Part shown: positions 1 to 10,734 of the stretch, one piece after another
Layout: every line of letters begins with the position of its first letter
Numbering within the stretch: position 1 is the first letter of the stretch
Assembly: GCA_051530055.1 (NCBI GenBank)
Contig: JBMGUZ010000080.1
Span: 1 to 10,734 of the forward strand
DNA from: Neoechinorhynchus agilis
Taxonomy: Eukaryota; Animalia; Acanthocephala
Length of the DNA stretch: 10,734 nt
Direction: 5' to 3'
Position numbers and translations under genes: made by a program
The notes under the pieces: model-generated
What the model was told of the DNA's origin: nothing
The model's input: the letters and a program-made list of their open reading frames with translations, nothing else
The model's database searches: none

Positions 1-1149
1 TTCATTTCGAGTTCGGATATCCGAGAGAAGATTGGGCAATAAGGAAAAAGGAGCGTAGGTCGAGGGAGGTGCGAGTACTGATAAATGAATGTGGCTATTT
101 ATTTCGGAGATGATTACGGGTCCGAGCGAGTGGGAAAGTTGTTTGGTTATTCGCGTCGAGGAGAGTTTGTGAAGTTGGGTCTTTCCTCAGGTTCATTTCG
201 AGTTCGGATATCCGAGAGAAGATTGGGCAATAAGAAAAAAAGGAGCGTAGGTCGAGGGAGGTGCGAGTACTGATAAATGAATGTGGCTATTTATTTCGGA
301 GATGATTACGGGTCCGAGCGAGTGGGAAAGTTGTTTGGTTATTCGCGTCGAGGAGAGTTTGTGAAGTTGGGTCTTTCCTCAGGTTCATTTCGAGTTCGGA
401 TATCCGAGAGAAGATTGGGCAATAAGAAAAAAAGGAGCGTAGGTCGAGGGAGGTGCGAGTACTGATAAATGAATGTGGCTATTTATTTCGGAGATGATTA
501 CGGGTCCGAGCGAGTGGGAAAGTTGTTTGGTTATTCGCGTCGAGGAGAGTTTGTGAAGTTGGGTCTTTCCTCAGGTTCATTTCGAGTTCGGATATCCGAG
601 AGAAGATTGGGCAATAAGAAAAAAGGAGCGGAGGTTGAGGGAGGTGCGAGTACTGATAAATGAATGTGGCTATTTATTTCGGAGATGATTACGGGTCCGA
701 GCGAGTGGGAAAGTTGTTTGGTTATTCGCGTCGAGGAGAGTTTGTGAAGTTGGGTCTTTCCTCAGGTTCATTTCGAGTTCGGATATCCGAGAGAAGATTG
801 GGCAATAAGAAAAAAAGGAGCGTAGGTCGAGGGAGGTGCGAGTACTGATAAATGAATGTGGCTATTTATTTCGGAGATGATTACGGGTCCGAGCGAGTGG
901 GAAAGTTGTTTGGTTATTCGCGTCGAGGAGAGTTTGTGAAGTTGGGTCTTTCCTCAGGTTCATTTCGAGTTCGGATATCCGAGAGAAGATTGGGCAATAA
1001 GAAAAAAAGGAGCGTAGGTCGAGGGAGGTGCGAGTACTGATAAATGAATGTGGCTATTTATTTCGGAGATGATTACGGGTCCGATCGGGTGGGAAAGTTG
1101 TTTGATTATTCGCGTCGAGGAGAGTTTGTGAAGTTGGGTATTTCGTCGG
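1..1149. repeat. Tandem satellite-like array, 191-192 bp unit, about 6 copies, truncated at the left window edge
   Basis: The unit start TTCATTTCGAG recurs at 1, 192, 384, 576, 767 and 959. Copies are near-identical. Copies 1 and 4 are 191 bp (A-run indel) and copy 4 has two extra substitutions. The last copy has substitutions at 1085, 1088, 1105 and 1140 and loses similarity near 1149. Each unit carries the 12-bp palindrome TCGGATATCCGA. Confidence 0.97.
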
Positions 1150-2383: not shown

Positions 2384-3386
2384 ATGACTGTAACCAATGA
2401 TCGCACTAAGAAGGAGTCCGTACTCGAACGAATGTTCCCGAATGGTTGCGTTAAAGTTCGCTCCAAGTGTGATATTCGGTCTGACGGTCGTAAACTAAAT
2501 GAGACTCGTTTGCTTGAAATTAAAATCGATACTCTAAAATGCCCACTGGTAGGATCAAGTTTGGTTGTGTTGGGAGGAACAGTGGTTAGCTGTGTCGTAA
2601 AACCTATGATATACATGAATCCACCAACGGACGATCTTGTCGTGATCGAAGTGGACAACACAACGATGACTTCTTTCCCCTACGCAAAAATCGATCGTTA
2701 CAAAAGTTCACTGATTGGTGACGGTCGGCCGAATGCGCTCGCCCGGATAGAATACGTCCTTCGGGAACTATTCGGTCATTCAATTAAGACAGAAGATTTG
2801 GCAATTGTGGGCGGAATGGCCTACTGGAGACTTGTAGTAAGTGTCGTTTGTGTAAAGGACGGCGGTAATCTAAACTATCAAAGGTTTCATGGGATTTGGC
2901 GAATCATGAGACATTTGAAATGTAATGGACGCCAGTGTTTTAGCCTGTTCGGCAGCCTTATTGTCGACCAAGCTTCCTCCGGTAACTTTTGAACCAAATG
3001 CTCATTTCAAAAAGGACGTGACTAATGCTTCGGCGGGAATCGAGCATCTTCAGTTTATACCCAAGGTGAACCTGAATGGTCCAAGGACACACATAAAAAC
3101 TAAACGTAATGCGGTCAGTGTTACTTTTAAGGTCATTGAAGGTTCGTTTTTCGTTGATCCAAATCGTAGAGAAGAGCTCATGGAGACTGAACAAAGTGCA
3201 TCGTTAAATGTGTGCTTCAACGATGATCTCGAAATCGTTATGGTGAATCAGTTCGGCGCTTGTTTCACTATGGACGAAAGCGGCTGCTCAACGAAACTTC
3301 GACTGGCAATTGAGGACGGGAAAAAGATCGCGAAAGGGTTTTTCAATGCACTAAACCGAACTAGTGCTGATTCACTTAATGACTGA
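2384..3386 (+). CDS. RNA exosome core subunit, RNase PH-ring family (Rrp42/Rrp43/Rrp45 group; Rrp43/EXOSC8 slightly favoured), ~316 aa, two coding segments separated by a 52-nt interruption
   Basis: Motifs RSDGRKLNETR, GSSLVVLGGTVVSCVVK, EDLAI..G..YWRLVVSVVCVKDGGNL, (M)DASVLACSAAL..TKLPPV and FFVDPNRREE match the RNase PH fold. ORFs 2384-2992 and 2925-3386 are in different frames, and removing 52 nt joins them. The paralogue cannot be fixed without a tree. Confidence 0.88.
2865..2935 (+). other. 52-nt intron or insertion with ambiguous boundaries and an internal hairpin
   Basis: Possible junctions: 2884-2935 (GT..AG, gives GGNLNYQSV); 2873-2924 (non-canonical, gives GGNLMDASV); 2865-2916 (GT..TT, gives GGNVMDASV). 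2865-2910 (GT..AG, 46 nt) leaves an in-frame TGA. A hairpin spans 2879-2917. Confidence 0.7.
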
Positions 3387-4066: not shown

Positions 4067-4252
4067 ATGCGAGGAAACGGATTGGATACAAACACACTTC
4101 TTCTTGTGTTAGTGGCTCTTCTACTGCCGCCAATTGCTGTTTTTATGGTCGAAGGTGGATGCACTGGACAAGTCTGGATCAATGTACTGCTGACGTTCTT
4201 TGGTTTTTTGCCAGGACTGATCCATGCTCTCTTTATCATTTTCAACGGTTGA
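4067..4252 (+). CDS. PMP3: Pmp3/UPF0057 plasma-membrane proteolipid, 61 aa, intronless
   Basis: Family pattern LLVLVALLLPPIAVF..GGC..QVWINVLLTFFGFLPGLIHALFII with two hydrophobic segments. The symbol is family-level only. Confidence 0.93.
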   Translation: MRGNGLDTNTLLLVLVALLLPPIAVFMVEGGCTGQVWINVLLTFFGFLPGLIHALFIIFNG

Positions 4253-4919: not shown

Positions 4920-4925
4920 TTTATT
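4920..4925 (-). promoter_or_regulatory. Candidate polyadenylation signal for the prodomain gene
   Basis: AATAAA on the minus strand about 170 nt downstream of the TAG at 5098-5100. Confidence 0.35.
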
Positions 4926-5097: not shown

Positions 5098-5532
5098 CTA
5101 TTCTCGATAGCGATAGAACTTCTTACGCTTATCTCGAACAGCAAAATCCCCTTTGAAGACTTCCCTGATCTGAAGAATCGAATTTAAGTAAAGTTTTAAA
5201 GTTTAAATACACTTACAGAAGGCTCACATTGCAAGTTTCTCAATGCAGTATTCGCAATGATGAACCCGACTTCATCGGCTGGCCCGTTCAGCATTTTTCT
5301 AAAGTACCAATACCCGTCCGATGGTACCTGGATTTCAAGTAAGTCCAATAGCGAAGTCAATTTAACTTACGTTTCCAAACTCAATAAAGGAATATCGTTT
5401 TTGTAGATCGATTGCAACTTTTTTTTCGTCCACTCCTTTGTTGAACCAAACGCAAAAGTCAACAAATCCATCATCTGGGCCCAGTGGAATGGCGGAGGCT
5501 ACGAAGAAAAGAAAAACGAACAAGAAAAGCAT
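5098..5532 (-). CDS. Secreted stand-alone proprotein convertase (furin/PC2/kexin-type, S8 pro-domain) prodomain protein, 114 aa, 3 exons: 5532-5371, 5327-5217, 5169-5098
   Basis: Two phase-0 introns with strong sites (GTAAGT..CCAG, 43 nt; GTAAGT..TTCAG, 47 nt) give MLFLFVFLFFVASAIPLGPDDGFVDFCVWFNKGVDEKKVAIDLQKRYSFIEFGNVPSDGYWYFRKMLNGPADEVGFIIANTALRNLQCEPSIREVFKGDFAVRDKRKKFYRYRE*. It has a hydrophobic signal peptide ending ASA. LQCEPSI...RDKR has the same 21-residue spacing as PC2 LERDPRV...RKKR. Only exon 1 appears in the ORF track. Confidence 0.8.
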
Positions 5533-5858: not shown

Positions 5859-6867
5859 TTAGAAAGCATCATCCAGTGAACCGATACCTTCTCTCAACTT
5901 GCGTTCGATTTTCTTTAAAACATTGGACAAAATAAAACTAACTATGTCGGGGACACCACCACGATTGTCGTGTTTCCTATCACCGATTTTCCTATGTAAG
6001 TTATCTATAAAGCTTATAAGCTCCTCATCATTACCATTTGGCTGCTTTTTTTGAAAACATTCTATCACATTCACATCAATAACAAAAGAAGACTCTAAAG
6101 ACCTTCCTGTCCTACCCACCACGTCCTCCTTTACCATTTCAGGGGCAACAGGTTTGCCAAACTGGTATTCTTGGGGAGCAAAAGACGATTTATCCACAAT
6201 GCTCGTTTTCATTGAATCTGCAGTCGAAGGTTTCTTTAAACGGTTCACGGTATTGTCGATGTGGTAACGATTTTCTCTAATGTAGCTGTGAACCTGTGTA
6301 TTGAGCTCAATAAAGTTCCTATTTTTATATTCACTTAATTGATCGCTTAAATATTCATCGGTGACTAATTCAATATTCGAGAGTTCTCTTCGGGGAAGTT
6401 GCGACATAACGGAATCTATGCGTTCACCTGTTACCTTCGTCATTTTCTGCAGCGAATGAAGATCTCGACTTTGGAATGGGACGAAACATCTCCTTAGTCT
6501 AGTAAAAGTTTCATCAGGAATTCGATCGCCTTTTTTACGCAGCTCATTTTTATTGTTTGTTTGTATCCTGCATGGATCATTTAATGTACTCAAATAATGA
6601 GTAGTCAGAATTTTGGCTGTGGATTTATGAAGTTCGTTCATCAAAAACTTCTTTTTCCTCTCGGTGATCCGATGCGGCACGCTGAACTTCCTATCACGGT
6701 TTCGTCCTCTGGCTCTATCACCCAGTTTTTCAAGGATGCCTAAATATTTTTATTAGGCAAGTTGAAAATTCTATAATGTATCCTGAGAAAGGTTTTAACA
6801 TTTTATCGTTAGCCTAAGCGTTGTGCAGTCGAACTCACAAGTTACCTTTTAGATTAAAATGCATCAT
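5859..6867 (-). CDS. Hypothetical/orphan protein, ~300 aa, 2 exons (6867-6846, 6739-5859), basic N-terminus
   Basis: The 273-codon open frame extends upstream to an acceptor (TTTAG, 6740). A phase-1 donor (AAG/GTAACT at 6845) joins an ATG-ATG exon in frame (MMHFNLKGILEKLGDRARGRNRDRKF...). No family recognised. Confidence 0.7.
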
Positions 6868-10034: not shown

Positions 10035-10734
10035 TTTTTAACAATTCAAACAATCTGTTCGAAGCACACTCACCACCTCCCGCCAAATTCTAGCTTTTGT
10101 CCTTCCTCGACCGTCGCCATCACGCTGGCAGCATTGCTTCGTTGTACTGCCAGCGAGATATTTTGTCGAAGGAATACACCTGCTCTTGAGTCTCCGGTCG
10201 TTTCTCTCAATTTCTTCGAGAGATCCTGGAGCAGAGTGCCGAGCGCTCCATACGTCTCTACCCCAAAGGGGACAAAATAGTGAGCCCTCGATAAGTGAAG
10301 ATATTTCCGTATTTTCCTCCCTTCTGCTGCACTGGCGGCACCACCGGCGATTTCGAGGGAGTAGGGGATGTTGCTGGCTGCGAGGGTGTCCCAGAGAAGG
10401 CATTTGCCCTCCCGCCACGGGAAGACCGAAATTCCATCGGGCCTACGGCCGTCTAGTCGACAAAGGTGGGCGGGTTCCAGGATGTTCGGGAAGTTCGCCG
10501 TTCTCAACGCCCGAGAAATTACGTTATTGATTTCAGAATGGCGTGAAAACCTTCCTGCTGACCTTCTGCAGACGAGACCGTGTCGCCCGAAAGCATCAAC
10601 CAAAGACCCACGTCGACAGCGATGGGGCGTGCATATCGGGAGACCGAGTCTTAAGGATACTGCGATCCTCGTCACCTCGTCAGTAAGAAGAGTTCCCACA
10701 GATGCCAGAGGAACAGCCTCCAACCACGCCCCAG
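10035..10734 (-). mobile_element. CRE-clade-like non-LTR retrotransposon, C-terminal zinc knuckle plus restriction-like endonuclease region, running off the right edge; decayed
   Basis: (S)GAWLEAVP, SLRLG, C..G..D..G.H.L.C, RH..IN, EP, RPDG, PW.EGK.L.WD, F.P...ET.G, RQ.IS.A.QR.NAAS are typical of this region. Apparent lesions: CRRG instead of CxCG, and in-frame deletions after WD (~10387) and after GALG. The TTG start in the ORF track is not real. Confidence 0.85.

What the first reader, a model, noticed from the sequence alone, without database searches (positions are those of the whole stretch)
5098..5532. Free-standing secreted proprotein-convertase prodomain gene: candidate new convertase inhibitor or chaperone
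Seen: a clean 3-exon ORF with a signal peptide, a full PC-type prodomain and the R-X-K-R motif (RDKR), then a stop 8 residues later and a downstream AATAAA. No subtilisin catalytic motifs were seen in the ~850 nt before Pmp3. Both introns fall where I recall PCSK1/PCSK2 prodomain introns to be (GQ|IGS ~ GN|VPS; DR|VIW ~ PS|IRE), which points to a truncated duplicate of a real convertase gene that kept frame and splice sites. Established: PC prodomains are intramolecular chaperones and potent inhibitors in trans, released by a second internal basic cleavage. Stand-alone prodomain-derived inhibitors exist for other proteases (I9 subtilisin inhibitors, CTLA-2/crammer for cathepsins). Here the internal polybasic site is absent (RKMLNGPADEVG) and two Cys are present. 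Inference: a hard-to-inactivate secreted inhibitor of endogenous or host furin-like enzymes. I do not know of a described animal example.
Basis: partly seen in the sequence, partly recalled or inferred. Interest (0 to 1): 0.82.

Follow-up and report, generated by a model that had tools for sequence, protein, structure and literature searches.

The report
Stand-alone secreted convertase prodomain gene
A thorny-headed worm (fish gut parasite) carries small secreted genes that are just the "safety-catch" prodomain of a furin-like protease with no protease attached, which makes them candidate natural regulators of such proteases and the first of this type I could find in an animal.

Summary
Window 5098-5532 (minus strand) of a Neoechinorhynchus agilis scaffold holds a clean 3-exon gene for a 114-aa protein: signal peptide, an 85-aa domain, RDKR, 8 more residues, stop.

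Standard searches find nothing: no Pfam hit, no PDB sequence hit, and phmmer over 1.84 billion proteins returns only one paralogue in the same species.

Targeted tests support descent from a proprotein-convertase (PC) prodomain:
- AlphaFold gives a confident beta-alpha-beta-beta-alpha-beta fold for both paralogues.
- hhalign against 29 natural PC prodomains (all Pfam PF16470) gives probability 89% and P 2e-6, end to end, finishing on the R-x-K-R. The real score is 34.9; the best of 300 column shuffles is 18.5.
- Both introns sit at the same positions and phase (0) as introns in several intron-bearing PC genes.

The two paralogues are old (43% identity, synonymous sites saturated). Both stop 5-8 codons after the basic motif. 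No subtilase exons lie within 10 kb in three genomic contexts.

The function, binding or inhibiting PCs or chaperoning them in trans, is inferred and not tested.

The scan noted the same gene before on other DNA of this genome (s1-255047, s1-303118). Unchecked notes of prodomain-less convertases in this genome suggest a split-enzyme reading, which I could not test.

The parts
5098..5532 (-). Whole coding region (ATG to TAG) of the stand-alone prodomain gene; product P0001, 114 aa
   Evidence: identical to annotated ACOME3_001577
5491..5532 (-). Predicted signal peptide (about residues 1-14, ...VASA|IP)
   Evidence: Hydrophobicity profile and the -3/-1 Ala rule (own knowledge). No dedicated predictor was run.
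5371..5532 (-). Exon 1: signal peptide, strand 1, helix 1, strand 2; ends ...EFGN
5328..5370 (-). Intron 1 (43 nt, phase 0), at prodomain profile position 33|34, as in PC genes
5217..5327 (-). Exon 2: strand 3, the loop invariant between the paralogues (FRKMLNGP.D.VG.IIA) that replaces the PC secondary cleavage loop, and helix 2
5170..5216 (-). Intron 2 (47 nt, phase 0), at prodomain profile position 68|69, as in PC genes
5098..5169 (-). Exon 3: strand 4, RDKR, an 8-residue tail and the stop
5125..5136 (-). RDKR (residues 103-106), aligned with the primary R-x-K-R cleavage site that ends PC prodomains
   Evidence: RD.RK is conserved in the paralogue
4920..4925 (-). AATAAA, candidate poly(A) signal 173 nt after the stop
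   Evidence: sequence only; no transcript data

Best explanation
This is a functional, free-standing gene for a secreted PC prodomain (S8_pro-domain type). It arose when a duplicated PC gene was cut short inside its third coding exon, just after the primary cleavage motif. Two old paralogues have kept this form. By analogy with PC and subtilase prodomains, the protein most likely docks its four-stranded sheet on a PC catalytic domain in the secretory pathway or outside the worm, and lays its C-terminal R-D-K-R in the active-site cleft. There it may be clipped after the Arg and stay bound as a product-like inhibitor. The loop that in PCs carries the second, releasing cleavage site is replaced by a non-basic sequence that is invariant between the paralogues, so release would be slow or differently controlled. 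Shown: gene structure, fold, remote homology, shared introns, stand-alone state, coding constraint. Inferred: binding to a convertase, inhibition, and the identity of the target (the worm's own PCs or the fish host's).
For: - Gene and product.
- Fold: beta-alpha-beta-beta-alpha-beta with core pLDDT about 90 for P0001; the same fold for the mature paralogue.
- Profile-profile comparison: hhalign of the two paralogues against 29 natural PC prodomains gives probability 89.2%, P 2.2e-6, over 77 columns, ending on R-x-K-R. All 29 sequences hit PF16470. The real score is 34.9, against a mean of 9.9 and a maximum of 18.5 in 300 column shuffles; the reversed query gives 7.8.
- Targeted HMM: a PC-prodomain HMM run with filters off gives 9.6 bits (E 7.9e-5) for P0001 and 8.2 bits (E 2.2e-4) for P0002. 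None of 2000 shuffles reaches either score.
- Introns: both introns of both paralogues are phase 0, at profile positions 33|34 and 68|69. The same positions and phase occur in intron-bearing PC genes L012, L087, L092, L027, L040, L062 and L121 (33|34) and L117, L055, L005 and L027 (68|69).
- Structure search: Foldseek against AlphaFold DB ranks first the N-terminus (15-110) of an unnamed 765-aa protein (E 8.5e-4). PC2, furin and PCSK4 N-termini are also among the best hits.
- Protein-language-model neighbours of both paralogues are almost all subtilase prodomain families.
- Stand-alone state: no S8 gene, motif or ORF within 10 kb in three contexts. The paralogue P0002 stops 5 codons after RDYR and has no GT there.
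- Constraint: paralogue differences by codon position are 0.42/0.34/0.69, and the RD.RK motif is conserved.
Against: - No Pfam hit for PF16470 or any other family at E<=10 for the whole proteins, the mature parts or the single exons.
- No PDB sequence hit.
- phmmer against 1.84 billion representatives finds no convertase.
- Structure searches of the PDB return only generic ferredoxin-like domains (Lrp/AsnC RAM, S6, EF-1 beta, acylphosphatase, ACT) and no subtilase prodomain in the top 50. Shape alone is therefore not diagnostic.
- The paralogue has RDYR rather than R-x-K/R-R.
- No transcript, proteomic or biochemical evidence was available here.
- The family is known from one species only, so conservation across species is untested.
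Confidence: 0.6

Rival explanations
1. Split convertase. The free prodomain is not mainly an inhibitor. It acts as the trans foldase (intermolecular chaperone) for convertase paralogues of this worm that have lost their own prodomain, so one enzyme is encoded by two genes.
For: First-stage notes on other windows of the same genome describe several furin/PC-like genes that seem to lack a prodomain (s1-038891, s1-039200, s1-039191, s1-269086). Subtilase and PC catalytic domains normally need a prodomain to fold, and prodomains can work in trans (established knowledge; introduction of PMC6993865). The prodomain genes occur as two paralogues plus a recent duplicate.
Against: Those notes are unchecked AI readings. 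I could not fetch any N. agilis convertase by reference, so neither the lack of a prodomain nor any pairing was tested. No convertase gene lies within 10 kb of any prodomain copy. The prodomain-like sequence is very diverged from PC prodomains.
Confidence: 0.17
2. Neofunctionalised relic. The protein descends from a PC prodomain but no longer deals with convertases. It is a small secreted ferredoxin-like protein with another ligand, for example at the host interface.
For: The most conserved stretch between the paralogues is not the sheet or the tail. It is the strand 3 to helix 2 loop (FRKMLNGP.D.VG.IIA), which has no counterpart in PCs. Similarity to PC prodomains is remote. RDKR is RDYR in the paralogue.
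Against: R and D at P4/P3, the P1 Arg and the following Lys are conserved at exactly the point where PC prodomains end. That is hard to explain without a protease-facing role.
Confidence: 0.13
3. Non-functional leftover or annotation artefact: a decaying fragment of a duplicated convertase gene that a gene finder happened to model.
For: The family is known from a single species. The three identical copies are a haplotig plus a 99% duplicate, so they add no independent support.
Against: Two paralogues at 43% identity with saturated synonymous sites both keep an open frame, a signal peptide, both splice sites and a confident fold. Third codon positions differ most. No trace of catalytic sequence remains after the stop.
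Confidence: 0.05
4. Convergence: an unrelated lineage-specific secreted ferredoxin-like protein that only resembles a PC prodomain.
For: The beta-alpha-beta-beta-alpha-beta fold is very common, and pure shape searches give generic hits. The literature considers convergence for other stand-alone propeptide-like inhibitors (PMC6993865).
Against: Two of two introns share position and phase with PC genes. hhalign gives P 2e-6 with shuffle controls. The alignment is collinear and ends on the cleavage motif.
Confidence: 0.05

Closest known systems
Prodomains of kexin/furin-type proprotein convertases (Pfam PF16470 S8_pro-domain; furin, PC1/3, PC2)
   Same: Position directly behind a signal peptide. 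About 80-85 residues. Beta-alpha-beta-beta-alpha-beta fold. Collinear profile match ending on R-x-K/R-R. Two phase-0 introns at the same places.
   Different: Not attached to a catalytic domain: a stop follows 8 codons after RDKR. No standard Pfam hit. The basic secondary cleavage loop is replaced by a non-basic sequence that is invariant between the paralogues.
Stand-alone subtilase propeptide-like inhibitors (MEROPS I9: Pleurotus POIA1, yeast PBI2, Arabidopsis SPI-1; also Toxoplasma MIC5 and Plasmodium SUB1-ProM; PMC6993865)
   Same: Small separate gene products that mimic or derive from a subtilase propeptide fold. Several are secreted, and some are from parasites. They have little or no sequence similarity to cognate propeptides. 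Language-model neighbours of P0001 and P0002 include I9 families.
   Different: Those examples come from fungi, plants and apicomplexans and relate to subtilisin/proteinase K-type enzymes. This one is from an animal and is of the kexin/PC type. Its origin from a convertase gene is traceable through shared introns. No Pfam I9 hit. Inhibition is not shown here.
Animal PC-binding proteins 7B2 and proSAAS, and serpin Spn4A
   Same: Secreted proteins that regulate convertases in the secretory pathway (own knowledge; Spn4A in PMC4147316, listed).
   Different: Unrelated folds and origins; none is prodomain-derived.
Propeptide-derived cathepsin inhibitors (CTLA-2, crammer; I29)
   Different: A different protease clan (papain-like) and an all-helical fold.

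Membership tests
PC prodomain (Pfam PF16470 S8_pro-domain) | Match to the curated Pfam model above its gathering score | tested here: not met
   No family at E<=10 for P0001, P0002, their mature parts or the single exons.
PC prodomain (Pfam PF16470 S8_pro-domain) | Significant profile-level similarity to verified members, collinear over the whole domain | tested here: met
   hhalign probability 89.2%, P 2.2e-6, 77 columns, template 6-83 of 83. All 29 template sequences hit PF16470. HMM with filters off gives E 7.9e-5 and 2.2e-4, with 0 of 2000 shuffles reaching either score.
PC prodomain (Pfam PF16470 S8_pro-domain) | Beta-alpha-beta-beta-alpha-beta open sandwich directly after the signal peptide | tested here: met
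   AlphaFold models of both paralogues. The fold is generic, so this is necessary but not sufficient.
PC prodomain (Pfam PF16470 S8_pro-domain) | Ends in the primary cleavage motif R-x-K/R-R after strand 4 | tested here: met
   RDKR at 103-106 aligns with the terminal R-x-K-R of the profile. The paralogue has RDYR, which keeps only the P4 and P1 Arg.
PC prodomain (Pfam PF16470 S8_pro-domain) | Basic secondary (internal) cleavage site in the strand 3 to helix 2 loop | tested here: not met
   The loop reads RKMLNGP.D.VG in both paralogues, where the PC profile has a run of basic residues.
PC prodomain (Pfam PF16470 S8_pro-domain) | Gene structure: introns at the positions found in PC genes | tested here: met
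   Phase-0 introns at profile positions 33|34 and 68|69 in P0001, P0002 and in multiple metagenomic PC genes. Truncated nematode PC2 gene models also break at 68|69.
PC prodomain (Pfam PF16470 S8_pro-domain) | Covalently followed by an S8 catalytic domain and P domain | tested here: not met
   A stop follows 8 (P0001) or 5 (P0002) codons after the motif. No S8 motif, ORF or Pfam family within 10 kb in L001-L004. No remnant after the stop.
Stand-alone propeptide-like subtilase inhibitors (MEROPS I9 / Pfam PF05922) | Match to the Inhibitor_I9 model | tested here: not met
   No Pfam hit. I9 appears only as language-model neighbours at scores 0.80-0.86, which are leads, not tests.
Stand-alone propeptide-like subtilase inhibitors (MEROPS I9 / Pfam PF05922) | Separate small gene product with the propeptide fold | tested here: met
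Stand-alone propeptide-like subtilase inhibitors (MEROPS I9 / Pfam PF05922) | Potent inhibition of a cognate subtilase | not testable with these tools
   Needs recombinant protein and enzyme assays.

The most novel reading that the evidence does not exclude
Neoechinorhynchus agilis has split its convertases into two genes. The prodomain is made from these stand-alone genes and supplied in trans, as foldase and then as regulator, to catalytic paralogues that have lost their own prodomain. This would be a natural two-gene zymogen system for a subtilase in an animal.
Probability: 0.17. Interest if true: 0.85.

Novelty: new variant of a known kind. Interest (0 to 1): 0.68.

Why it matters
Free propeptide-like inhibitors of subtilases are known from fungi, plants and apicomplexan parasites. 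I found no described animal example and none of the furin/kexin type, in either the literature searches or a limited protein search.

Here the origin can be read directly. A convertase gene was cut off right after its prodomain and kept both introns. That makes it a clear case of a regulator born from a zymogen's own safety catch, where convergence has been considered for other such inhibitors.

If it binds convertases, it is a natural furin/PC-directed protein that lacks the usual release site. That would be useful as a scaffold and as a probe of prodomain release. In a gut parasite it could also touch host convertase-dependent processes. If the unchecked notes of prodomain-less convertases in this genome hold, it may be half of a split enzyme.

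Tried and rejected
- Pfam on each exon, on the whole proteins and on the mature parts: no hit.
- PDB sequence searches with the protein and with the two-sequence profile: only chance hits such as beta-lactamase and eL20.
- phmmer against 1.84 billion representatives: only the paralogue, plus two giant repeat proteins. Their short matches are repeated helix-strand units without a relevant Pfam family, so I rejected them as spurious.
- Structure searches of the PDB (Foldseek twice, VIA-align wide) and shape searches of the ESM Atlas: mostly generic ferredoxin-like domains (the two Atlas shape searches also returned a few subtilase-prodomain rows), so shape alone cannot decide.
- Looking for catalytic exons: motif scan in six frames, ORF lists and Pfam labels of called genes around all copies. 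Nothing found.
- Looking for a remnant of the catalytic N-terminus after the stop, reading through with X: nothing.
- dN/dS between the paralogues: synonymous sites are saturated, so only the codon-position pattern is usable.
- Assigning the parent subfamily (PC2-like versus furin/PC1-like): scores are too close to decide.
- Survey for other short proteins with PF16470: 13 hits. Those I read are truncated gene models or transcripts, not clear stand-alone genes. The search is word-limited (130 candidates).
All comparison sequences come from metagenome loci fetched.

Full report
**What the window is.** The 10,734-base window is the whole unplaced scaffold JBMGUZ010000080.1 of Neoechinorhynchus agilis (GCA_051530055.1). 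This is an acanthocephalan from the gut of thin-lipped mullets. The scaffold is 99.5% identical to a stretch of chromosome CM121341.1 at 6.55-6.57 Mb (L002), so it is most likely an uncollapsed haplotype. A 4.4-kb piece that includes the gene recurs at 99% identity about 234 kb away (L001).

**The observation.**
- On the minus strand the gene has exons 5532-5371, 5327-5217 and 5169-5098. Two short GTAAGT...CAG introns of 43 and 47 nt are both in phase 0.
- The product (P0001, 114 aa) equals the submitters' model ACOME3_001577. BRAKER is cited in the genome paper, but I did not read which annotation pipeline produced the model.
- It starts with a hydrophobic signal-like segment ending ASA|I.
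- It carries RDKR at residues 103-106 and stops 8 residues later. AATAAA follows 173 nt downstream.
- The three copies differ by one synonymous base.

**Standard homology searches are blank.**
- Pfam finds nothing at E<=10 for the exons, the whole protein or the mature part.
- PDB sequence searches give only chance hits.
- An exhaustive phmmer run over 1.84 billion representatives finds one real relative, P0002. This is ACOME3_002469, 135 aa, 43% identical, on the same chromosome at 10.53 Mb. Two spurious repeat proteins also appear.
- A profile search of 5.8 billion proteins again returns only these two.
- By sequence, then, the family is confined to this species.

**The paralogue is informative.**
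- P0002 has the same three-exon structure with introns at the same two places.
- A signal peptide follows an internal Met.
- The motif is RDYRK where P0001 has RDKRK, and the stop comes 5 codons after the Arg.
- Its neighbours are unrelated: ribulose-phosphate epimerase upstream and a cyclic-nucleotide-binding channel on the other strand downstream.
- Differences between the paralogues fall 0.42/0.34/0.69 on codon positions 1/2/3, and synonymous sites are saturated.
- Two old copies have therefore been kept as short open frames under coding constraint.

**Fold.**
- AlphaFold2 with only these two sequences gives a confident model for P0001: core pLDDT about 90, pTM 0.65. The elements are strand 20-30, helix 36-46, strands 51-55 and 60-66, helix 73-87, strand 92-104.
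- The mature paralogue gives the same beta-alpha-beta-beta-alpha-beta fold.
- This is the ferredoxin-like fold, to which SCOP assigns protease propeptides (own knowledge). It is very common.
- Accordingly, Foldseek and VIA-align against the PDB, and shape searches of the ESM Atlas, return mostly Lrp/AsnC RAM domains, S6, EF-1 beta, acylphosphatases and ACT domains. A few subtilase prodomains (Fervidolysin type) appear among them.
- Foldseek, which also uses sequence, is more specific against AlphaFold DB:
  - Rank 1 of 2.3 million clusters is the N-terminus (15-110) of an unnamed 765-aa protein (E 8.5e-4, TM 0.65 by query).
  - A 'Convertase P-domain' entry and a PCSK4 fragment also appear.
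  - In Swiss-Prot, PC2 of six mammals and two furins are among the top 30, aligned at their N-termini.
- Protein-language-model neighbours of both paralogues are almost entirely subtilase prodomain families: Fervidolysin_NPro, Peptidase_S8_N, Inhibitor_I9 and CspB_prodomain. These scores are below 0.9 and count as leads only.

**A direct test against real convertase prodomains.**
- No convertase was available by reference, so I scanned metagenome contigs for the PC His-box (HGTRCAGE, nine residues, CGVGV). This fetched 120 loci.
- Thirty-four hold long intron-free convertase ORFs. From these I cut 29 non-redundant prodomains (alignment A3). Every one hits Pfam PF16470 S8_pro-domain.
- hhalign of the two worm proteins against A3 gives probability 89.2% and P 2.2e-6 over 77 columns. 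The match covers template positions 6-83 of 83 and ends exactly on the terminal basic pair.
- Controls: 300 column shuffles of the query score 9.9 +/- 1.9 with a maximum of 18.5, against 34.9 for the real query. The reversed query scores 7.8.
- A plain HMM of 15 prodomains, run with filters off, scores P0001 at 9.6 bits (E 7.9e-5 for one comparison) and P0002 at 8.2 bits (E 2.2e-4). None of 2000 shuffles reaches either score.
- In the reverse direction, the weak two-sequence HMM placed every non-negative best hit (9 of 34 convertases) in the prodomain region of the 650-960-residue ORF.
- These scores explain why Pfam's filtered pipeline reports nothing. The similarity is real but remote.

**Introns.**
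- Many of the fetched contigs are genomic and have introns. By joining neighbouring exon hits at GT/AG sites and keeping the best-scoring join, I located their prodomain introns.
- A phase-0 intron lies between profile positions 33 and 34 (after ...G-x, before V/I) in L012, L087, L092, L027, L040, L062 and L121.
- A second phase-0 intron lies between 68 and 69 (just before the V of the V-x-W-x-E-Q-Q block) in L117, L055, L005 and L027.
- Aligned to the same profile, both introns of both P0001 and P0002 fall at 33|34 and 68|69, in phase 0.
- Truncated nematode PC2 gene models in the protein database also break at 68|69.
- Two out of two shared intron positions and phases argue for descent from a convertase gene and against convergence.

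**Stand-alone state.**
- No subtilase Asp, His or Ser box occurs in any frame of the window or of the 20-kb loci around the other copies.
- No called gene there carries an S8 family.
- Downstream ORFs are unrelated.
- In the window, the next genes downstream are on the other strand: Pmp3 and an RNase PH exosome subunit.
- Reading past the stop with X shows no remnant of the catalytic N-terminus.
- The truncation lies inside what is the third coding exon of PC genes.

**How it most likely works.**
- Established for subtilases and PCs (summarised in PMC6993865, and own knowledge): the prodomain folds the catalytic domain, is cut at its C-terminal motif, and stays bound as a tight inhibitor with its tail in the active site. 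It leaves after a second cut in the strand 3 to helix 2 loop.
- P0001 keeps the sheet, the helices and the terminal R-D-K-R. The R, D, second R and following K are conserved in the paralogue.
- The loop, however, is replaced by FRKMLNGP.D.VG.IIA. This is the longest stretch that is invariant between the paralogues, and it has no basic cleavage site.
- I therefore infer a secreted convertase-binding protein. It would act as a substrate-like or product-like inhibitor whose release is not governed by the usual second cut. The target is either the worm's own PCs or the host's.
- This is inference. No binding, cleavage or expression was tested.

**Leads from the scan.**
- Other first-stage notes on this genome flag the same 435-nt gene on other DNA (s1-255047, s1-303118), presumably the chromosomal copies.
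- Separate notes flag several furin/PC-like genes that seem to lack a prodomain (s1-038891, s1-039200, s1-039191, s1-269086).
- If that is true, the free prodomains could be trans foldases for them.
- I could not retrieve those proteins, so this stays an untested rival and the most novel reading.

**Novelty.**
- Stand-alone propeptide-like subtilase inhibitors are known: POIA1, PBI2, SPI-1, TgMIC5 and SUB1-ProM.
- Literature searches found no animal or PC-type example.
- A word-limited database survey for short PF16470 proteins gave only fragments.
- I rate it a new variant of a known kind. It is an animal, kexin/furin-type, intron-traceable free prodomain.

**Limits.**
- The family has only two sequences.
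- Structure models rest on a two-row alignment.
- E-values from my own HMMs are per-comparison values for a single pre-stated hypothesis.
- Intron mapping depends on a profile alignment, though it is anchored by conserved residues on both sides.

Noticed in passing
window 1-1144: A 192-nt unit repeated 6 times at 98% identity, strongly G-rich on the plus strand (GC skew about 0.48). Each unit carries a 62-aa ATG-to-stop ORF. The array also occurs in the chromosomal copy L002.
   Followed up: partly
window 4067-4252 (+): An intact single-exon Pmp3/UPF0057 proteolipid gene (Pfam PF01679, E 4e-19) that is missing from the list of called genes for this scaffold. Two further copies at about 85% identity lie in L002 (18637-18862 and 3164-3389).
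   Followed up: partly
window whole; L001, L002: The scaffold is a 99.5% copy of chromosome CM121341.1 at 6.55-6.57 Mb, probably an unpurged haplotype from the pooled-worm assembly. A 4.4-kb segment (part of flavokinase, the upstream gene, the prodomain gene and about 830 nt downstream) recurs at 99% identity near 6.79 Mb. This may be a real recent duplication or a scaffolding artefact.
   Followed up: partly
window 5859-6680 (-): A 273-aa ORF directly upstream of the prodomain gene with no Pfam family. It is annotated as 114 aa on the scaffold but as 300 aa in the chromosomal copy, so the gene models are inconsistent.
   Followed up: no
window 10070-10723 (-); L004 10840-11100 (-): A 217-aa ORF in a GC-rich end of the scaffold, with no Pfam hit. 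Its C-terminal tail (...NAASV..T.EEG..L.F.GRW) recurs in an ORF next to the paralogue locus. It is probably the end of a dispersed mobile element.
   Followed up: no
window 2384-3386 (+): An RNase PH-type exosome subunit gene (weak RNase_PH, clearer RNase_PH_C hits) split over two overlapping ORFs. Another first-stage note (s1-272227) discusses its 52-nt interruption.
   Followed up: no
L005-L124 (metagenome contigs): The PC His-box pattern retrieved 120 environmental convertase genes. Intron positions 33|34 and 68|69 of the prodomain are shared across PC2-like and furin/PC1-like genes, so they are old. L031 and L021 appear to have different prodomain introns (63|64 and 59|60).
   Followed up: partly
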